Notes: generated from the sequence alone by a model not told the origin. Shown: positions 15,781 to 26,546, counted from the stretch's first letter. The stretch is DNA of 64,000 nt from Octopus bimaculoides (GCF_001194135.2 NC_068995.1:45464769-45528768); one strand, 5' to 3'. Numbers and translations: made by a program.

Positions 15781-16521
15781 TGTTATCCTGCAATTCATGT
15801 AACTTAACATTTCATACTTAAGTTTCCCATCAATGCACAACCACACTGACAGTAGCTGTTGTAGATAATTTTTATTTCAGCTATGTATGTATTTATATTT
15901 CCTGATTAAAATACTTCCTAAAGACCTTAATTAGAATTTATCTCCAGTTTCAACACAAACCTAACACAAAGGGCAACAAATCACAAGACATTTAATCAAC
16001 ACGTGTATTTATTTATTATTAACTTTGTATGTCAAATCAATTATTAGAATATAATAGTTTATACCAAGTACGCATGGGAACTTTCCTAAAATTGAAATCT
16101 AAAATTTAGGAAGAATTCTAAACCGATTCCGACAAGTTGCTTCAGCTTTCACCGTAATTTCAGTCTGTAAACATGTCATGCACATTTAAACATTTCATTA
16201 TTTTACATTAAAAAAATATTAAATAAAAATTAGTTTGTAACATGCCAATCACAGTACCAGTTCTGGATAGTGGTTATAACAATAGTAGTAGTAGTAGTAA
16301 TAATAATAATAATAATAGTAGCAAACAGTAGTAATAGTAGTAGTAATGACAATAGTAGCAGCAGCAGAAACAGTAGCGGAGCTGAAGGTTAGCAAAGCAG
16401 CAGTGGTGGGCAGCCATCAACAAGGGATCCAGGAGGAGGGGTCAATCGAATGAGTGGCAGTTGTGAGGGAGGGGAGAAGAGGACAGGGATGAGCAAGAGC
16501 TGGTGTTGCTGCTACTTACAT

Positions 16522-16597
16522 CCATGGTTCAGGAAGATAATGATTCATTGTTCTCACACTACACAACAACAAAATTCATTAGTCTTCCAGACCATGG
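16522..16597 (-). ncRNA. mir-7: mir-7 precursor hairpin in the last hnRNP K intron
   Basis: 5p arm UGGAAGACUAAUGAAUUUUGUUGUU (16589-16565) has the intact miR-7 seed and 3' end; 3p arm AACAAUGAAUCAUUAUCUUCCU (16552-16531) pairs with it; basal stem CCAUGGUC/GAACCAUGG; host gene matches the known human and fly arrangement. Confidence 0.93.
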
Positions 16598-17552
16598 GTG
16601 CCAAAGGTTAGTTACAAGCCAAATCCCATCACCAATGTCTCATGCACATCATCGATAATAGCCACCAGATGCCACCCAATGCTAACCAAAAAAAAGCCTA
16701 ACCACACCCATTAAACTGGTACCATCAAAATTTTAAACCTAAAGCTACTTTGTGAAAAAGTAATGGCTACAACAAGAACATTAAGCTTTAGAAGAAACAC
16801 TCCCTTACTTCACAATGTAACACAATAACACACATTTAGATTTTAAGAAATAAATTTGATTTACACATCTGTTACTAATTTTTTTATTTTATTTAAAAGA
16901 CATTTAAACTAAAAATTTAGATTCCAATAAAGTTAATAGATTTTCTAACTTTATAAAAAAAGATTTCAATAAAACAATGCTTTGTTTTTTCCTTACATTG
17001 GATAAATGAGAATTTGTAATTCTTGTTACCACTCTTATCTTAGTGCTTGGTTCTTCTAAAGGTGTTCAGATTGAACCCAGACTTCTCTCTCTCTCTCTCT
17101 CTGGCATATATTATACATTTTGCTAGCTTGCTAAATAAAAACTATACTAATTTATGCTGTGTAAAACCTAAATGGACCAACAATTAGACAAAGATGCAAT
17201 TATCAAATTAACCAAATAGCAAATTCCTTTTGATATAATGTATCAATAATCAAAGCTTTCCTACGAGAGGATGGGAAATCAAGTGGCAACCATTCTATAG
17301 AATTAATTCTTCGTGCACTGGATTTACTTTTAGTAAGAAGTAAAAAAGTTTTAGTGTCACTAAAAAAACAGGTTAGTACATGTGAGTAATGGAAGACGAA
17401 GGTACAGATAGCTAATACAATTTCTAATCAAGGCATTAGTGTCTCTTTTGTTTACAACCAACAGAATGCAATGCAATGAGGAATAGAAGAGAGGAAAGAG
17501 GAGAAACAAATATGAAGAAAAAGACCAAGTTTTTGCCTGGCACTCAACTAAC

Positions 17553-18239: not shown

Positions 18240-19113
18240 CTGAAATTATTGAAATATTTGGCCGATTAATATTTTTAAAGTACAGGTTTGAAATAAATGT
18301 GGAACTAGAAATGAAATAATAGCTACAACATGGAACATTATGAGATAATGAGAAACTAATAAAGTATTTACCATGCAGAGAGACAGAGAGAGAGAGAGAG
18401 AGAGAAAGAGAAAGATTTGATGAATTAGATTCAATAAAGAGATTTGCAGAAGACAGAAATATATTTAGTGAGTTAATGCCGTCTGACTCAACAGAATGAA
18501 GATGTTAGAACTGCTTGGTGCAGGAAAAAGATGTGACTACGTTTACCTTGAGGTGAGTGATATCATTAGAAGAGAGTATAATATTGATTTTAATTGTGAA
18601 ATAGGAATTATAATGAGGAAAGAAAACAATAAAACATTCTTCGAATAACATTTAAATCCTAATTAGGACCATCAGTGATACCTCTAGACAGAAATTTGGG
18701 GAGAGCTAAAAAGGGAAGCTAAGCCTATATGCTATTTTGTGCACGTTTGCCTAGGACAAATAACTCAATCCACAATTAGAACACTTAAGGCCACCATCAA
18801 CTCGTAAGTGCACAGCTTCAAGAGAAATTGGGCAAATACTGAATGAAAAGGCAAAAAAATCAACAAGCTTTCGAAATAAACTTAACCACTAAAAGTAATA
18901 AAATGTGATGAAAATTGGATTGTTGAATTTGTTTTGTTTTGTTTAAAATATCATTGATTAGTTTGCAAGTTTTTTTTGTTTGTAGATTGAACTTGGCTAC
19001 AGAATAATTTTGACAAACTTACAAATTGTTCAAGAGGAATAATCTAACGATGGTTGGGGCCCTCTCTAGAGGTATCTCTGCTGCACAGCACTAGTATGAT
19101 AGAGTGTTATTAC

Positions 19114-19290
19114 CTCATTCCTCCAAGTTCTTGCAGGCCATCATCTCTGCCCCCACTGCCACCGCCACCACTGCCATAGGGGAGAGCAGCACCCATGTTG
19201 TTTCTACCTCCAGTTAGGCTAGGTAGTCCACCCCTGCTCATGGAGCCAGACCCTCCCATGCCCATATCTCCCATTCCTCCAGCAGTACCT
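19114..19290 (-). CDS. HNRNPK: hnRNP K coding exon 9, Gly/Met-rich linker: GTAGGMGDMGMGGSGSMSRGGLPSL...GLQELGGM
   Basis: 177 nt, tttcag/gtaata; open and phase consistent. Confidence 0.88.
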
Positions 19291-20198
19291 CTGAAATTTT
19301 CACAATTCAGACTTATTTACAGCAGAATCCAAAAGTTTGGAGTTCAAATTTAAGCATTTCAAAGCATGAAATATAGAGAATGAAAATCATTGTTTATATA
19401 AAAATTGCCAAAAATCAGTGGCCACAAACTAGTTCACATCTACATATAAAAACTATATCATAAACTGATATTACCTTAATATTGATAAGAGTGAAACTTC
19501 ATTAATACTTAACTTACAATAAAGAGAAAACAAAACCTAAGAAAGAAAAAAAACTGGAGCCATTTTAATTTTTCAGAGAATCTAAGTCAATATTCTAAGA
19601 TATAGTATTACTGACACAAACATATGTTTATGTATCTTTAGGAGATTTTGCATTTCTCTAATATGCAAATATCTTATGAATGGTTAGGATAGAGCTAATG
19701 GAAATTAAATCTATGGATCAAAAGCAGTGGTTAAGGAATTATGTTTTGATCAAAGGCTCACTTTGCTAATAGCTTCGTTTATTAACACTACACTTCTTAA
19801 TTACACTAATGAAGTTACTCAGGTGTGATGAAGAACAAATGAATAAAAAAAAGGGAAATAAAAATGATACAATGAAGAAAATACTTCAAATACTTGATGA
19901 AGGGTTAAGAGATGAAATAATGAAATAAATTTTTAAAAATTAACATTTTTGTAGTTTATACATGAAATAAGGACAAGGGAATTATTTCCCTTAATTTTCA
20001 GGCAAGTCAACTAAATGGGTGACTTAATAAATATATGAATTAGGGAATATTTTATGAAGGTATGTTTTTCAAATGCAGCATTTAAATATGAAAAGTGATC
20101 AAAGATCTTAAGCTTCTACATACTACAGTACTTTAAAAACAATGCTATTTATGATAGTATCTTAATTATTAATATATAAACCTGGAAAGTTAACTTAC

Positions 20199-20377
20199 CG
20201 TCCTCTTATCTGTGGGCTCATCAATGGAGAGACACCTCCTCGTGGTGGTGGTGGCGGGGCACCCCTAGGTAGTTTACCACGGCCCCCCTCTGCAATGGTG
20301 TAACCACCATAGTCATGGGCGTAATACTCATCATAATTGTGTGGATCATATGGCTGGTTAACTCCTTTCGGTGGTGC
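20199..20377 (-). CDS. HNRNPK: hnRNP K coding exon 8: APPKGVNQPYDPHNYDEYYAHDYGGY...PPPPPRGGVSPLMSPQIRG(R)
   Basis: 179 nt, ctgtag/gtaagt; P.KG..QPYDP..YDE....YGG motif typical of hnRNP K. Confidence 0.95.
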
Positions 20378-20518
20378 CTACAGAAGATGGAGAGACCATT
20401 ATACACCAACTGTTGCCTGTTCCTCACACCATGTCATTTACTTTACAATGTATTTGAGAAGAGTTCTGAAACATTTACTATAATATATAATGAAAAACGT
20501 AAAAAAATATTGACTTAC

Positions 20519-20647
20519 CATTTCCAAAAGCTCATAAATAACATTAATGCAAGCTATGACCACAGGAGGTCGACCAGAAATTGCCACAACACGATCAGTG
20601 GACTGGGCACAGCAGGTTGAGTACACCTTGATGTTTGCTCCAGTTTT
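20519..20647 (-). CDS. HNRNPK: hnRNP K coding exon 7 (KH2, second half): KTGANIKVYSTCCAQSTDRVVAISGRPPVVIACINVIYELLEM
   Basis: 129 nt, tttcag/gtaagt. Confidence 0.96.
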
Positions 20648-20773
20648 CTGAAACAAATATTTGATATTTATAGAGATATGTAAGAAAAAAAAACTTCAAC
20701 ATTCAAATAGGGTTAAAATGCAAGAGAACAATATAGACACTAAAGAATGAGGAACACAAAGAAAGATACACAC

Positions 20774-20887
20774 CTCTCTCAACTCTTTGATCTTAAAACC
20801 AGCTCTACCAATAATGCAACCAGCCTGGCTCTGGTGAACCAATATTCTTATTTCACAGTCATATTCATCATTGGAGAACTGTTTGTA
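20774..20887 (-). CDS. HNRNPK: hnRNP K coding exon 6 (KH2, first half): YKQFSNDEYDCEIRILVHQSQAGCIIGRAGFKIKELRE
   Basis: 114 nt, ttgcag/gtgtgt; KH2 signature. Confidence 0.96.
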
Positions 20888-20992
20888 CTGCAACAGAGAT
20901 TGAGCCTTAGATTTTTATCTCAATAATAACACAGAAAAGTGAAGCTTCAATATAGACAATATTTTACAAAAGACTACATGAAATATACATAC

Positions 20993-21065
20993 ATCTTCAA
21001 GGGATGGTATAATGTCTGCCAAACAGTCCAATGCTGTATCTATGTCTGCACCAATTGTCAAAATT
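20993..21065 (-). CDS. HNRNPK: hnRNP K coding exon 5 (end of KH1): ILTIGADIDTALDCLADIIPSLED
   Basis: 73 nt, ttacag/gtatgt; resembles human [24 protein letters not shown]. Confidence 0.95.
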
Positions 21066-22626
21066 CTGTAAAATGTAAAAGGGATTTGAAATAATTATAG
21101 CTGTAGAAAACAATGTAACAGTCAAGATGTCTTTTATTTAAAAAAAAAATTAAAAAAATAAAAATACCAATTTACTAGACTGGTATGCAGATTAATAACT
21201 AAGTGCATAATCCATCTGAATGTTCAAATGGATAAAAATAAAATAAAATAAAATAAACTAACTGACTGTCGTACTAAATGTTCACGATATGCTGTGTAGA
21301 TGAATGAACTACAGTTACTTAGTTACTGAAATCTAGTTGTAACCTTTCAGCAGCTATATCATCTAGAGACCTTGGAATTTAGTCCTTACAAACATTGGAG
21401 TTTATTGTTTAACAAATTCATATTATGTAGATATATATATGTATATATAAACCAAACGGTATTTAAGACTCTGAGCTGTGTCACATTTCATATCAAGCTG
21501 TCTATTAAGTGGGAATGGTTAAGTGCAGAAGAAACCCAAAGCTTAGAATGTAATGAATTAAATTACTAGAATATTAGCTTTGATAAATTAGGTCTTTGAC
21601 AGTGATGATGTTTTCCTTTAAGTGACATGAAGCAAGTTCTAATAAATTAGTAAATCTCAAAAGGAAAATAAAATATTTATAAATATACATTAATACTTTT
21701 TTTTTTTTTAATTAAGAAATATAATTAAGCAAGGGGAATTTGGAGTATGAGAATTTAATATTAAAAAAAAAAACCATGAATAAGATGAAACTAAAAATAA
21801 ATAAAAAACCACTAAATACCCAAAGTAATTGTTAGGCTGTTTAAACCCATGCCCTTTCATTTTTAAGCAGAGATCTCCACTGATACAGAACTCAATGACT
21901 TAAGAATAAATATATACAACTATCTTTACAATTCACAGAGCACATACAACTTTTCAAGTGTCATCCACTAACTTGGAGGATAGTAATAATAGCTGCTGGT
22001 TTAACACTTCCATATTAAAAGAAAACTATATTAGAGTTATGATAGACATCTAAATTACAATATGAATTGTATAAAAAAAAAAAAAAGTCAAGTTGTTGAT
22101 CACTTAGTGAATTGCAGTAGAAAATAGAAACCCGTGATGAAAAAGCAAATAAACATTTTTTTTTTTTTTTAATATTTTATTTTTTGAAGCTGTAACAAGG
22201 AACTATTATGAGTATGAAGTACCCAATTTTAGATTTGGTCGTTGACTGGGAATCGTTGGGTGGGATGGACTGAATATTAATACATCTAGCAGGGAGTAAT
22301 GCAGATTCCAAGTTATTGAGCTCTGTATGTGGTTATTTCCCAAGATCCTAACTAGCTAGCTACATTTACTGGGTATAAGAGAGAATATGAGAGAGAGAGA
22401 GAGAGAAAAAGAAATTTAGAGGGTGACAGAAGAGTGGGAAAATAAATTTAAATAGAAGAAAAAAAATAAAGAACTAAAGAGTGAATGACATCAGATAAGT
22501 TTTGAAAGGGTGGGAAGAAAAAAATGTAAAAACAGTGTGGAGAAAAAAGAACTTACAATGGGCTTTTAACATTATGAAACAGTTATTAATAAAATGTGTA
22601 GTAGTACAATGCAGTAGGGTGCATAC

Positions 22627-22670
22627 CGTTCAGGGCCGGTGCAATCGGGCACTGTAACACTTGCTTTGAA
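22627..22670 (-). CDS. HNRNPK: hnRNP K coding exon 4 (KH1): FKASVTVPDCTGPE(R)
   Basis: 44 nt, atgcag/gtatgc; resembles human YNASVSVPDSSGPER. Confidence 0.95.
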
Positions 22671-24033
22671 CTGCATCATGGATGGACGGACGGACGGGCA
22701 GGGATGACGTTCCGTGGGTCAGGGATATTCAGGGTCAACAGACGGGCCATTGGTGGACATGGAAGGGCAAGAAGAATGGGGCAGGCAAGATATATATAAC
22801 AAAGTATTACTACCAGAAATCTTCACAATGGGCATAAAAAAGTAATATAAATGGAATCCATACATTCATTGAACAAGTCAACTTCAACGGGGCTGAAATT
22901 CTGTGGAATAAAAACTGGAGGCATTAGTTAAGACAAACTTGCAGTACTGAGAGATACTTGCAGGGAAAGTCTTGTTTTCCCCTATAACGTTCTGACTAGT
23001 TCTCTTTCTCCTCAATTCAGTTTTTCCCTTCTTAGAGACAGACAGGTTCCCGGGAATGGGTTATAAAAGAGAAAGGAAGCTGCTTTGTTCCTGAGAGAGA
23101 GAGAGAGAGTGAGAGAGAGAAAGAGAGAGGGAAAGTTACATTTCCCTCACACATATCTTCACAATATCAACTGCTGGCTGGTCAAATTCAGCTGCCACTG
23201 ATAAAAAGAACAACAGTGCAAAGCCTTACGTTTCAGATTGGGGGAACATCCCAGTCAACAAGCAGAATTTGAAAAAATTTCTTTTTATAAATAGTTTTTT
23301 TTTTTGTTCCATAGTAATAAAACATTCTTGCATGCATGGTTATGTTCAAAGAAATAATACCTAAAAGGAATAAAGAAGGAGAATTAGCTATAAGTTAAAT
23401 GCACCTCCATCTTTTGTGCAAGATTGGGGTTACTTCTCGACCCCTTTTCAACTCCTGCTTAACGTTTCAAGTTTTTATAATCACTATAGTCGGGTTCAGA
23501 TGCTACATTTATCGACATGCACTGGAAGTCCAGTTTGGGAAAATAGCTATCATCATCAAAAGTTCAGGAGTAAGATCATATNNNNNNNNNNNNNNNNNNN
23601 NNNNNNNNNNNNNNNNNNNNNNNNNNNNNNNNNNNNNNNNNNNNNNNNNNNNNNNNNNNNNNNNNNNNNNNNNNNNNNNNNNNNNNNNNNNNNNNNNNNN
23701 NNNNNNNNNNNNNNNNNNNNNNNNNNNNNNNNNNNNNNNNNNNNNNNNNNNNNNNNNNNNNNNNNNNNNNNNNNNNNNNNNNNNNNNNNNNNNNNNNNNN
23801 NNNNNNNNNNNNNNNNNNNNNNNNNNNNNNNNNNNNNNNNNNNNNNNNNNNNNNNNNNNNNNNNNNNNNNNNNNNNNNNNNNNNNNNNNNNNNNNNNNNN
23901 NNNNNNNNNNNNNNNNNNNNNNNNNNNNNNNNNNNNNNNNNNNNNNNNNNNNNNNNNNNNNNNNNNNNNNNNNNNGAAAATAGCATGTCATGTGGTGTGT
24001 TTTATATACTTATATGTGCACACGCACACACAC

Positions 24034-24080
<47 letters not shown>

Positions 24081-24500
24081 AAATAGTTGTTAGATACAAC
24101 TGTCAAATTTGATGGCCAATTTGGACAATGAAACAAACTAGTCAACCTTCACTACTTTCAAAGTTCATTTTCCGATGAAGGTGAAAATAAAGGATAATCA
24201 TCTCGTTACTTTCAAAGATGAAATATTTACAACAAAATGTGATATATAGTTAGATAGATATATATATATTTCTAATCTCTATTTTAAGACAAAGTTTAAA
24301 AATCACTTGGTACTAATATTTACTGACAAACAACACACCCACCCTCAAGAGAAGAATTAACGTCACCTTCTCATAAAATGGCAACTAGCATCTAGGCAGA
24401 AGCAATGCCTGATTTTGTCTTCATTATTACAAAAACATTAAAAATATAATAAATATGAGAAAAATGGTAACGGAAAAACTGTTTAATTAGAAATACTCAC

Positions 24501-24557
24501 ATGTTCTCTTAATCTTTTAATATTACTGCCACCCTTGCCAATGATAGCTCCAGCATT
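24501..24557 (-). CDS. HNRNPK: hnRNP K coding exon 3 (KH1 GxxG): NAGAIIGKGGSNIKRLREH
   Basis: 57 nt, tttcag/gtgagt. Confidence 0.96.
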
Positions 24558-25022: not shown

Positions 25023-25126
25023 TTTGCTCTGAAGTAAAATTCTTAACTCAATTTTTGGCCCACTGCCACGAGCTCTCTTCATCGATGAGTCATCATCTTC
25101 TTGTTCTAGTGGCCGCTTCATTATGC
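25023..25126 (-). CDS. HNRNPK: hnRNP K coding exon 2: (G)IMKRPLEQEDDDSSMKRARGSGPKIELRILLQSK (bipartite NLS, start of KH1)
   Basis: 104 nt, caacag/gtaggt; KRP...KR.R NLS and ELRILLQSK as in human hnRNP K. Confidence 0.95.
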
Positions 25127-26546
25127 CTGTTGAAAAATCAATTAAAATGAAAAACAAAAACCCATTAGTCTCATTTGTAATACACAGAAACATATATATA
25201 AAAAGCAACTCCCTAACAAATATTTGGGGGATTTAATTTACAGAAATATTTTTTTCACAAGCCATCCACGTAAGAAAAATTTTACAAACAAATTACTAGA
25301 GTAAATCTTTAGGAAAATGTATATGGAAAAAAAAATGCCTACAATAGCCCCAGCAATCAATCAAAAGGTAAAAAGAGTGCCTTAAAGATTAATAAAGGGT
25401 GGCAACAGGTAAATCAGCCAAGTAGGAAGGTACCTGCTCCTTTTGCGTGAAGATAGAGAAAACTGATAAAATGGCTGCTAAACTCAGCATTCAACACCAA
25501 CTGAACAGACAGCAAACTCAGGAAATAAGACTCAAATGAAAATTCTTTTCATGTAGAACACCAATATCAAATAGGATTCTGGAGAGAGAGAGAGTGTTTT
25601 ACCAAAGCCTTTAACAAAGAGATGAAGATTCAGACTCAACACTTGACACATGAAAAGATAGTATTTTTTTTTCCATCTTTTATCTTTTACTTTGATTCAG
25701 TTATTGGACTGTGGTCATGCTAAAGCACCAGAGTGAAAGGTTTGGTGAAACAAATCAACCCCAGGACTATTTTTAAGTCTCGTGATTATTCCATTGGTCT
25801 CTTTTGCCAAACTGCTAAAAGTAAAGTAACTGCTATGCCTAAAACTAAACTCAGAGATGTATCTAATCTCTTTTGTAACACCTAATCAATGCCAGAGTCG
25901 GCATATGTGTGCACATGCAATTGAACACCAGCTCCTCACACCTAGCAACCACATAATCCAACAGTGTATATCTTTAGCACTAAGATGAAAGCTGGTAAAA
26001 CTAGGAAACCCACACACTGAAGAAATAGAACTAAACTGAAAGTAGACTGGAAAGGAATAACAGGATGATTAAAAAAAAAAAAAGAACAAAAATACCAGAT
26101 TCACAAATAAAAACTCTTGTAAATTTGGGCAAGGAGAAAAAAATAATATAAAACCTAAAAAGACAAAATAACCAGAACCCCATTAACCAACACTAATTTG
26201 CTGGACGAGGAGCAAGAAAATAACAAAACCATTACTACCAGTCCTACTAAAGAGTAACTTAGAATTTATAAATGCCAAAATTTAATAAGAGTCACCCACC
26301 TCTTCAGTGAAATATAATTACTTCAATTTCAGTTAAAATGAAGCATTAAGTGGACTTGTAATATACAACACAGAAATAGCCAGAGGGAAAATAAAATTGT
26401 AGATGTTAAAAGCTGATAAACACAAAGTAAAGAAGAAAAAAATTAAAAAAGATATCACAAAAATAAAATTCATCTGAAAGAAAATACATACCCCAAGGTG
26501 ACCTATTGACCAAAAAGTGATCAGTTAAAACATCATTAGTTTTCAC

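What the first reader, a model, noticed from the sequence alone, without database searches (positions are those of the whole stretch)
22814..22931. Strong upstream 3' splice site opening a premature-stop exon
Seen: minus strand ttAACTAATgcctccagtttttattccacag|AATTTCAG..., a branch-like motif about 23 nt before the AG (22902-22901), a better-looking acceptor than the true exon-4 acceptor 230 nt downstream. In frame with exon 3 it reads NFSPVEVDLFNECMDSIYITFLCPL-stop (TGA at 22825-22823). It could be a 230-nt extension of exon 4 or an 87-nt cassette using a weak CTG|GTAGTA donor. Inference: the poison alternative used when the C-rich acceptor is blocked.
Basis: partly seen in the sequence, partly recalled or inferred. 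Interest (0 to 1): 0.7.

Follow-up and report, generated by a model that had tools for sequence, protein, structure and literature searches.

The report
Deeply conserved splicing block in hnRNP K
The splice-acceptor look-alike is real and sits at the edge of a ~360-base non-coding block around a tiny exon of the octopus hnRNP K gene that is almost unchanged between octopuses and cuttlefish/squid, which points to a self-regulating splicing switch, although no RNA using the predicted splice site was found.

Summary
The window is Octopus vulgaris. The gene is hnRNP K, on the minus strand.

By sequence alone the site is ordinary. It ranks 78th of 538 AGs in the gene, and stops are expected in AT-rich intron.

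Conservation makes it special. A block, 22946-22588, starts 46 nt upstream of the candidate exon start and ends 39 nt past exon 4. It is 96.9% identical to the cuttlefish Acanthosepion pharaonis, while coding exons are 74-88% identical. The 140 nt before exon 4 are AG-free and hold the densest cluster of C-triplets in the 64-kb window. C-triplets are the motif bound by hnRNP K-type KH domains.

The predicted junction 24501>22900 is absent from the assembled RNA of 16 runs. One of those runs keeps paths down to ~0.3% of the main path. Only exon 3>exon 4 and unspliced intron are seen.

My verdict: this is a conserved splicing-control module for exon 4, probably feedback through unproductive processing. 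Use of the upstream acceptor itself is unproven. Raw reads and NMD inhibition were not available.

The parts
22588..22946 (-). Core conserved non-coding block enclosing exon 4. A weaker conserved fringe runs out to 22973 and 22546.
   Evidence: Octopus versus Acanthosepion pharaonis locus L001: 10 substitutions and 1 indel in 359 nt (96.9%), with exact runs of 95 and 71 nt. The flanking intron is about 32% identical, i.e. unalignable. Coding exons of the same gene are 74-88% identical. Decapodiform organisms G, H, I and J and octopods K and M hold the same block in RNA contigs.
22923..22930 (-). Branch-point-like motif TAACTAAT (branch A at 22924).
   Evidence: Read directly. It matches the CTRAY consensus and is identical in Sepia. 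It lies 23 nt upstream of the AG.
22901..22922 (-). Pyrimidine tract and CAG of the candidate upstream 3' splice site (AG at 22902-22901).
   Evidence: 14 of 19 pyrimidines, rank 78 of 538 AGs. There is 1 substitution in 46 nt against Sepia. No junction contig ends here in any run.
22671..22900 (-). Candidate 230-nt 5' extension of exon 4. It has stops in all three frames.
   Evidence: Translation. Octopus stops at TGA 22825-22823; Sepia stops four codons later at TAG TAA. Substitutions in the open part are 3 non-synonymous to 1 synonymous, and there is a 1-nt indel, so it is conserved as nucleotides, not as a peptide.
22823..22825 (-). In-frame TGA, 196 nt upstream of the exon 4/5 junction.
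22804..22814 (-). GGTAGTAATAC: a weak donor candidate (CTG|GTAGTA). It also supplies the stops in the Sepia frame and marks the start of the AG-free zone.
   Evidence: Donor score -0.94, rank 101 of 604. It is 100% conserved.
22671..22810 (-). AG-free, C-triplet-rich tract that serves as the pyrimidine tract of the true exon-4 acceptor. It contains CTGAC, a consensus branch motif, about 49 nt upstream of the exon by my hand count.
   Evidence: 8-9 C>=3 patches per 140 nt, against a window mean of 0.74 and a 99th percentile of 4; the top windows on either strand are all here. The 137-139-nt AG-free gap is the longest in the gene. There are 5 substitutions in 143 nt against Sepia, and none falls in a C-triplet.
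22627..22670 (-). Exon 4 (44 nt, FKASVTVPDCTGPER, part of KH1).
   Evidence: tblastn. Junction contigs in all RNA runs. It is 100% identical to Sepia, including synonymous sites.
22606..22679 (-). Predicted hairpin. AUGAUGCAGU (the exon-4 3' splice site) pairs with ACUGCAUUGU in intron 4, and the inner stem covers the 5' splice site.
   Evidence: -25 kcal/mol, z = -2.4, 5 of 200 dinucleotide shuffles fold as well. It coincides with the 95-nt perfectly conserved run. No covariation test is possible because nothing varies.
24501..24557 (-). Exon 3 (NAGAIIGKGGSNIKRLREH), the donor that would feed the candidate acceptor.
   Evidence: Its donor continues only into exon 4 or into unspliced intron in four deep runs.
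23324..23403 (-). Second, smaller conserved block in intron 3: GCTAAT, a pyrimidine tract, TAG|GTATTA, then TGCATGCA.
   Evidence: 82.5% identity over 80 nt against Sepia. The acceptor score is the third best in the gene region. No junction was seen.

Best explanation
The candidate acceptor is the upstream boundary element of a splicing-control module built around the 44-nt exon 4 of hnRNP K.

**Parts of the module, 5' to 3'.**
1. A consensus branch site, pyrimidine tract and CAG (22930-22901).
2. About 90 nt with stops in every frame.
3. A 140-nt AG-free tract carrying 8-9 C-triplets. This tract is also the weak, C-rich pyrimidine tract of the true acceptor.
4. Exon 4, with both of its splice sites inside a predicted hairpin.

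**Proposed mechanism.**
- Poly(C)-binding KH proteins, most plausibly hnRNP K itself, load onto the C-triplets. This sets how well the true acceptor competes with the upstream 3' splice site.
- When the true acceptor loses, the pre-mRNA is processed unproductively in one of two ways. Exon 3 may join 22900, giving a stop after 26 codons, 196 nt before the next junction, which makes the RNA an NMD substrate. Or the upstream site may engage the spliceosome without ligation, so intron 3 stays in and the frame stops after 5 codons.
- Either route lowers hnRNP K output.

**Shown:** the sequence anatomy, the extreme conservation, the C-triplet extreme, the presence of unspliced intron 3 and 4 in RNA assemblies, and the absence of the alternative junction at steady state.

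**Inferred:** protein binding, the direction of the effect, NMD, and feedback.

Within this explanation I rate 'mostly retention or decoy, with rare or no ligation' and 'ligated but removed by NMD' as about equally likely.
For: - **Gene identity.** The gene model is 100% identical to an O. vulgaris hnRNP K-like protein.
- **Conservation between lineages.** The block 22946-22588 is 96.9% identical between octopus and cuttlefish, against 74-88% for coding exons. The same block is present in RNA of decapodiform organisms G-J and octopods K and M.
- **Sharp 5' edge.** In all decapodiforms the block ends at 22946, 16 nt upstream of the branch motif.
- **Conservation within Octopus.** There are 0-1 differences in 481-706 nt where 14-22 are expected.
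- **Substitution type.** All 9 octopus-to-decapodiform substitutions are transitions.
- **C-triplets and AG-free gap.** The C-triplet density is the maximum of the 64-kb window, and the AG-free gap is the longest in the gene.
- **Not coding.** The extension has stops in all frames in both lineages and shows no protein-level constraint.
- **Exon 4.** Its synonymous sites are invariant, and a hairpin holds both splice sites (z = -2.4).
- **Unspliced RNA.** Unspliced contigs cross the exon-4 acceptor at 4-36% of the spliced junction depth. Introns 5-7 have no unspliced contigs in the same runs.
- **Vertebrate parallel.** Frog and eel HNRNPK carry a mutually conserved (z = 28), C-rich, 267- to ~290-nt AG-free block just upstream of the orthologous 44-nt exon.
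- **Literature.** PCBP binding to a C-rich pyrimidine tract controls a cassette exon (PMC5829739). HNRNPK knockdown changes retention of introns that it binds (PMC7026658).
Against: - **No alternative junction.** No contig shows 24501>22900, 22814>22670 or exon-4 skipping in 16 RNA runs from 8 organism labels. This includes a run that keeps paths at ~0.3% of the main path.
- **No matching ORF.** No ORF reads exon 3 into the extension in 5.8 billion proteins.
- **Retention is not specific.** Unspliced signal is also seen for long intron 8 and the 3' end of intron 4, so retention is not clearly specific. Contig depth is a poor measure.
- **Direction of regulation.** Published data have PCBP1 enhancing inclusion through a C-rich tract, and HNRNPK knockdown increasing retention. 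Both suggest activation rather than repression, which would not give negative feedback.
- **No binding or NMD data** exist for cephalopods here.
Confidence: 0.45

Rival explanations
1. The block is a constitutive exon-definition enhancer. A 44-nt exon with a weak C-rich pyrimidine tract, between introns of at least 1.8 kb and 1.56 kb, needs a dense array of intronic enhancers. These would be C-triplets bound by PCBP-type activators, together with a structured exon. The block is conserved because exon 4 must always be included. In this reading the upstream AG is never used and there is no feedback.
For: - Exon 4 is included in every spliced contig, and no alternative partner of exon 3 is seen.
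- PCBP1 enhances exon inclusion through a C-rich tract independently of U2AF65 (PMC5829739).
- HNRNPK knockdown increases retention of bound introns (PMC7026658).
- The 57-nt and 44-nt exon pair and the C-rich AG-free upstream tract recur in an annelid, a frog and an eel.
Against: - It does not explain why conservation extends 276 nt upstream and stops just beyond a perfect branch site, pyrimidine tract and CAG.
- It does not explain why the AT-rich 90 nt between that AG and the C-tract are 94% identical.
- Ordinary constitutive exons of the same gene have unalignable flanks.
Confidence: 0.25
2. The block is conserved for a reason unrelated to splice-site choice, and the acceptor-like motif is a passenger. 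Candidate reasons are a DNA enhancer, G-quadruplex or i-motif-forming DNA (the template strand carries 9 G-triplets), an antisense or independent transcript, or a double-stranded structure for A-to-I editing.
For: - Contigs carry no strand information, so an antisense RNA cannot be excluded.
- The contig 22641-23121 has 2-9 times the depth of the 5' part of intron 3. Simple retention does not explain this.
- There is a local hairpin over exon 4.
Against: - The block is centred on an exon and bounded by splicing signals on the sense strand.
- There is no Rfam match at E<=1, and the global fold z-score is -1.2.
- No A>G (T>C) variant contigs appear in exon 4 or the block, even at a threshold of 1 in 100.
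- Indels of 1 and 4 nt exclude a conserved ORF.
Confidence: 0.12
3. One reading: an 87-nt poison cassette (22900-22814) that uses the CTG|GTAGTA donor and is spliced in as a classic poison exon.
For: - The 3' splice site is good.
- The cassette carries an in-frame TGA in octopus.
- GGTAGTAAT is invariant.
Against: - The donor is weak: score -0.94, rank 101 of 604, against ranks 6-25 for true donors.
- No 22814>22670 joint was found in any run.
- In Sepia the in-frame stops are TAG TAA, which straddle that very donor. A cassette ending at the G before GT would therefore contain no stop. Its length there is 86 nt, so it would act by frameshift instead.
Confidence: 0.05

Closest known systems
Highly conserved or ultraconserved unproductive-splicing elements in SR and hnRNP genes (Lareau 2007; Ni 2007, cited from my own knowledge and through PMC11288931)
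   Same: It is a non-coding stretch inside a splicing-regulator gene that is more conserved than the coding exons. It wraps alternative splice signals whose use gives a premature stop.
   Different: It is found in cephalopods, not vertebrates. The event would be an alternative 3' splice site extension rather than a cassette. The alternative junction has not been observed. The longest perfect run is 95 nt, not the >=200 nt of the strict definition.
PTBP1 exon 11 and hnRNP L exon 6A autoregulation (Wollerton 2004, through PMC11288931; Rossbach 2009 from my own knowledge)
   Same: A cluster of the protein's own binding motif sits in the intron next to a small exon of its own gene. Mis-splicing of that exon gives a frameshift or stop and NMD. 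Exon 4 is 44 nt, so skipping it would also shift the frame.
   Different: No skipping and no poison junction were seen here. Binding of hnRNP K to its own pre-mRNA is untested. One paper states that hnRNP K autoregulation is still an open question (PMC8423707).
Decoy-exon model of intron retention (PMC6097662, PMC7373989)
   Same: A conserved cryptic exon or 3' splice site lies inside a long (>1 kb) intron that is found unspliced in RNA. The decoy is rarely ligated, which matches the missing junction.
   Different: Nuclear detention, dependence on the decoy's splice sites and regulation are all untested. The candidate decoy 5' splice sites are weak.
C-rich polypyrimidine tracts controlled by poly(C)-binding proteins (CDK2 exon 5; PMC5829739)
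   Same: A C-rich tract lies directly upstream of the controlled exon, and KH-domain poly(C) binders are the expected readers.
   Different: That system enhances inclusion of an alternative exon, and hnRNP K had no effect on it. Here the exon looks constitutive and the tract is much longer (140 nt, 8-9 C-triplets).

Membership tests
AS-NMD (unproductive splicing) event in an RNA-binding-protein gene | The alternative junction exists in RNA. | tested here: inconclusive
   The junction is absent from contigs of 16 RNA runs, including one that keeps ~0.3% paths, and from predicted ORFs. However, only assemblies were available, not raw reads, and there was no NMD inhibition.
AS-NMD (unproductive splicing) event in an RNA-binding-protein gene | Use of the site puts a stop codon more than 50-55 nt upstream of a downstream exon junction. 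| tested here: met
   The TGA at 22825-22823 is 196 nt before the exon 4/5 junction. In Sepia the stop is TAG TAA, four codons later.
AS-NMD (unproductive splicing) event in an RNA-binding-protein gene | The isoform rises when NMD is blocked. | not testable with these tools
   No NMD-inhibited cephalopod data are on hand.
AS-NMD (unproductive splicing) event in an RNA-binding-protein gene | The gene's own protein binds near the event and shifts the choice. | not testable with these tools
   Only the motif is shown: 8-9 C-triplets per 140 nt, the maximum for the window.
Ultraconserved element (strict: >=200 nt perfectly identical) | At least 200 nt of perfect identity between distant species. 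| tested here: not met
   The longest exact runs between octopus and Sepia are 95 and 71 nt. Identity is 96.9% over 359 nt.
Decoy-exon-mediated intron retention | The host intron is long and is retained in a measurable share of transcripts. | tested here: inconclusive
   Intron 3 is at least 1.83 kb. Unspliced contigs run at 2-36% of spliced depth, but introns 4 and 8 show them too, and depth is unreliable.
Decoy-exon-mediated intron retention | The decoy's splice sites are needed for retention. | not testable with these tools
   This needs minigene or antisense experiments.
PCBP/hnRNP K-controlled C-rich pyrimidine tract | A C-rich tract lies directly 5' of the exon. | tested here: met
PCBP/hnRNP K-controlled C-rich pyrimidine tract | The exon is alternatively included. 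| tested here: not met
   No exon 3>exon 5 contig was found; exon 3's donor continues only into exon 4 or into intron. This is contig-level evidence only.

The most novel reading that the evidence does not exclude
The block would be the cis-element of an ancient hnRNP K self-regulation circuit.
- A cluster of the protein's own C-triplet motif guards the acceptor of the 44-nt KH1 exon.
- This cluster has been kept almost base-for-base in coleoids since octopods and decapodiforms split, roughly 250-300 million years ago by my own recollection.
- It is mirrored by a separately conserved C-rich AG-free block at the same position in vertebrate HNRNPK (frog and eel), and by a C-rich AG-free tract, with only ~3 C-triplets by my hand count, in an annelid.
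- That would give the first concrete, testable element for hnRNP K autoregulation. It would also be one of the most conserved non-coding elements known in molluscs.
Probability: 0.3. Interest if true: 0.8.

Novelty: new member of a known kind. Interest (0 to 1): 0.6.

Why it matters
Many splicing regulators hold their own level steady through conserved unproductive-splicing elements. For hnRNP K this has been named as an open question (PMC8423707). I found no described element in the searched literature.

The block gives a precise candidate, with three parts that can each be mutated on their own:
- a competing 3' splice site;
- a platform of C-triplets;
- an exon enclosed in a hairpin.

A similarly placed C-rich, AG-free conserved block in frog and eel suggests that the logic may carry over to vertebrates. 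There hnRNP K dosage matters for disease: the papers read here link its mislocalisation to frontotemporal lobar degeneration and to malignancies (PMC8423707), and I recall haploinsufficiency causing Au-Kline syndrome.

The block also shows that invertebrate genomes hold intronic elements more conserved than coding sequence. Such elements could serve as signposts for regulated splicing.

Tried and rejected
1. **Sequence homology to vertebrates and an annelid.** By eye, strings such as ATGGCCC(G/A)TCT looked shared between the octopus tract and the frog, eel and annelid tracts. Local alignment against 300 dinucleotide shuffles gives z of about 0, so this is rejected. Only the architecture is shared. 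Frog against eel gives z = 28.
2. **Structured RNA or a known RNA family.** There is no Rfam match at E<=1. The whole-block fold has z = -1.2. Only the exon-4 hairpin stands out mildly.
3. **A coding extension.** This is rejected by stops in all frames, a 1-nt indel and 3 non-synonymous to 1 synonymous changes.
4. **A-to-I editing.** No variant contigs were found in exon 4 or the block.
5. **Depth-based retention claims.** The 22641-23121 contig is 2-9 times deeper than the 5' part of intron 3. But contig depth is a flat mean, allelic splitting in non-conserved intron can halve depth, and introns 4 and 8 also show unspliced contigs. I therefore use depth only qualitatively.
7. **Raw reads.** No raw-read (2026) runs were offered for these organisms.
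8. **Locus look-ups.** Six of eleven returned nothing.
9. **Ni et al. 2007.** The paper is not held.

Full report
**What the locus is.** tblastn with human hnRNP K (sequence written from memory) placed a KH-domain gene on the minus strand, from about 25120 to 17530. A hand-built model of exons 2-8 is 100% identical to 'heterogeneous nuclear ribonucleoprotein K-like isoform X3 [Octopus vulgaris]'. Exon 3 is 24557-24501 (NAGAIIGKGGSNIKRLREH, phase 0 at both ends). Exon 4 is 22670-22627 (44 nt, FKASVTVPDCTGPER). Exon 5 starts at 21065. RNA contigs confirm the junctions 25023>24557, 24501>22670 and 22627>21065 and the junctions of introns 5-7, all GT-AG. Intron 3 holds an assembly gap (N run 23582-23975).

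**Checking the observation.** Every base is as described:
- TAACTAAT lies at 22930-22923.
- The pyrimidine tract and CAG have their AG at 22902-22901.
- The reading frame gives NFSPVEVDLFNECMDSIYITFLCPL-TGA, with the TGA at 22825-22823.
- CTG|GTAGTA has its GT at 22813-22812.
- The true acceptor is 230 nt downstream.

On sequence alone the site is good but common. A crude score (pyrimidine content, -3 base, branch motif) ranks it 78th of 538 AGs in 11 kb, ahead of the true exon-4 acceptor at 103rd. The candidate cassette donors are weak: ranks 101 and 63 of 604, against 6-25 for the true donors that could be scored. These scoring schemes are my own rough ones, not trained models. An early stop is expected in AT-rich intron.

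**What makes it unusual is conservation.** Close Octopus taxa (coded organisms D and E) differ from the window at 2.3-4.4% of positions in neighbouring intron. Yet they show 0 differences in 481 nt and 1 in 706 nt across 22415-23121 (Poisson P 1e-6 and 6e-9).

I fetched the HNRNPK locus of the cuttlefish Acanthosepion (Sepia) pharaonis (L001). blastn of the octopus gene against it finds the coding exons at 74-88% identity. It finds the stretch 22973-22546 at 93.7% over 430 nt. In the alignment the parts compare as follows:

| Region (window coordinates) | Length | Identity |
|---|---|---|
| Core block, 22946-22588 | 359 nt | 96.9% (10 substitutions, one 1-nt indel) |
| Branch site, tract and AG | 46 nt | 97.8% |
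| Next 87 nt (cassette part) | 87 nt | 94.3% |
| C-rich tract | 143 nt | 96.5% |
| Exon 4 | 44 nt | 100% |
| First 39 nt of intron 4 | 39 nt | 100% |
| Sequence outside the block | - | ~32% (unalignable) |

RNA contigs of further coded organisms show the same block. G, H, I and J carry the Sepia-type differences and Sepia-type exon 3, so they are decapodiforms. K and M are octopods. L has a third pattern. In every decapodiform the match stops at 22946, 16 nt upstream of the branch motif. All nine octopus-decapodiform substitutions are transitions.

The extension is not conserved as protein. Sepia has a 1-nt deletion that changes the frame; its stop is the TAG TAA of GGTAGTAAT. The four substitutions in the open part are 3 non-synonymous and 1 synonymous. 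All three frames are closed in both species.

**Anatomy of the block.**
- The 140 nt before exon 4 (22810-22671) hold 8-9 separate runs of three or more C. The window mean is 0.74 and the 99th percentile is 4. The best windows on either strand of the whole 64 kb are all here.
- The same stretch is the longest AG-free gap in the gene (137-139 nt). It contains a consensus CTGAC about 49 nt (by my hand count) before the exon.
- C-triplets are the known target of hnRNP K and PCBP KH domains (my own knowledge; PMC9701828 abstract).
- A hairpin pairs the exon-4 3' splice site (AUGAUGCAGU) with intron 4 positions +12 to +21, and it buries the 5' splice site. It scores -25 kcal/mol, z = -2.4, with 5 of 200 shuffles folding as well. 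It coincides with the 95-nt perfectly conserved run.
- The block as a whole is not strongly structured (z = -1.2) and matches no Rfam family.

**RNA evidence.** Only Logan contigs were available; no raw-read runs were offered.
- In 16 runs that contain spliced hnRNP K mRNA, the only contigs touching the block are the exon 3-exon 4 and exon 4-exon 5 junction contigs and unspliced contigs. The unspliced contigs run unbroken across 22900 and 22814. The runs are X12, X13, X15, X18, X36 (organism A); X26, X32, X33, X34 (D); X31 (E); X49 (H); X53 (I); X55, X59 (J); X60 (K); X64 (M).
- When only exon 3 was laid, four deep runs showed exactly two continuations of its donor: exon 4 and the unspliced intron. 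That also excludes, at contig level, exon-4 skipping and use of the conserved TAG|GTATTA at 23360.
- Contigs do capture real alternatives. The two partners of exon 8's donor appear at about 1:1.
- Run X15 keeps paths of depth 4.5-190 beside main paths of 1250-1580. In that run, use of 22900 is therefore probably below about 0.3% at steady state.
- A search of 5.8 billion predicted proteins with exons 1-3 plus the extension peptide found no ORF containing it. It found only intron-retention ORFs: intron 2 in an octopus, and the orthologous intron 3 in other spiralians.
- Unspliced contigs at the exon-4 acceptor have 4-36% of the depth of the spliced junction. They have 2-11% at exon 3's donor. 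Short introns 5-7 have none. Intron 8 and the 3' end of intron 4 have some.
- I treat depth as qualitative only.

**Beyond cephalopods.**
- The 57-nt and 44-nt exon pair is conserved in Capitella (L003), the frog Engystomops (L004) and the eel Anguilla (L005).
- Frog and eel share a strongly conserved block (local alignment z = 28). It starts with ATTAAAATGTATT and a long pyrimidine tract about 260-290 nt upstream of the exon. It is C-rich (7 C-triplet patches in the last 140 nt in frog). It has no AG for 267 nt in frog (computed) and about 290 nt in eel (counted by eye). It continues about 85 nt downstream of the exon.
- The octopus tract does not align to the frog, eel or annelid tract better than shuffled controls (z about 0). 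What is shared is the design, not demonstrable sequence homology.
- In vertebrates there is no upstream competing AG. The upstream acceptor is so far a cephalopod feature.

**Interpretation.**
- The position and sharp edges of the block argue for an RNA-level splicing function centred on exon 4. So do the invariant synonymous sites of exon 4, the invariant branch site, tract and CAG at its 5' edge, and the record cluster of poly(C) motifs in a poly(C)-binding protein's own gene.
- The best-fitting model is competition between a strong-looking upstream 3' splice site and a weak C-rich true acceptor, tuned by KH-protein occupancy of the C-triplets, with unproductive outcomes.
- The missing junction means one of two things. 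Either the extended exon is made rarely or is efficiently destroyed, or the upstream site acts as a decoy that holds the intron (as in PMC6097662 and PMC7373989).
- Published effects point towards activation: PCBP1 enhancing inclusion (PMC5829739), and HNRNPK knockdown raising retention of bound introns (PMC7026658). The sign of any feedback is therefore open. A purely constitutive exon-definition role remains a serious rival.
- I found no paper describing an hnRNP K autoregulatory splicing element. One paper explicitly lists it as unknown (PMC8423707). The literature held is open-access only.

**Verdict.** The feature is best filed as a new, deeply conserved member of the class of splicing-regulator control elements, with its mechanism unproven.

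Noticed in passing
window 23324-23403 (minus strand): A second conserved island lies in intron 3 (82.5% identity to Sepia over 80 nt). It holds GCTAAT, a pyrimidine tract and TAG|GTATTA, that is, a 3' splice site abutting a 5'-splice-site-like GT as at a recursive splice site. About 30 nt later comes TGCATGCA, which contains the Rbfox-type GCAUG motif. No junction was seen in contigs.
   Followed up: partly
window 19104-19327 (minus strand): This Gly/Met-rich alternative coding exon (..GTAGGMGDMGMGGSGSMSRGGLPSL..) is 90% identical to Sepia at nucleotide level. Exon 8's donor joins it, or the next exon (NAMNGSMGA..), at about equal contig depth, so inclusion is about 50%. It is absent from isoform X3.
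   Followed up: partly
window 16503-16652 (minus strand): A 150-nt stretch is 93.3% identical to Sepia. It lies downstream of the KH3 exon and is probably the last coding exon or 3' UTR. It is a second near-invariant block in the gene.
   Followed up: no
L002 (Octopus bimaculoides CM046609.1), 2001-3080: The O. bimaculoides 'hnRNP K-like' protein P0004 (71% identical, lacking KH3) is encoded by a single uninterrupted 1080-nt ORF. It looks like an intronless retrocopy-type paralogue. P0003 is a relative of it.
   Followed up: partly
window 23582-23975: There is an assembly gap (394 N) inside intron 3. RNA contigs bridge it with 412 nt (X12 contig 4), so the true intron 3 is about 18 nt longer than drawn.
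   Followed up: partly
window 25126-25140 and 20888-20905 (minus strand): O. bimaculoides isoform X5 (P0121) carries extra residues, DFSTG before IMKRP and AQSLLQ before YKQF. These match alternative upstream acceptors of exons 2 and 6 that are also readable in this window.
   Followed up: no
window 22641-23121 versus 24054-24530: The unspliced contig over the 3' part of intron 3 is 2-9 times deeper than the contig over its 5' part in every run checked (for example X34, 343 against 38). Whole-intron retention does not explain this. Possible causes are allelic splitting of k-mers in the non-conserved part, an internal start, or an antisense RNA.
   Followed up: partly
L004 1463-1850 and L005 6367-6790: Frog and eel HNRNPK share a conserved C-rich block around the orthologous 44-nt exon. 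It has no AG for 267 nt in frog and about 290 nt in eel. It starts with ATTAAAATGTATT and a long pyrimidine tract, which looks like a distant-branch-point acceptor.
   Followed up: partly
window 20150-21100, run X15: Run X15 carries many low-depth contigs with single-base deletions and shifted pseudo-junctions in exons 5-8. These look like sequencing or assembly noise. They are useful here only as a gauge of how rare a path that run's contigs retain.
   Followed up: no
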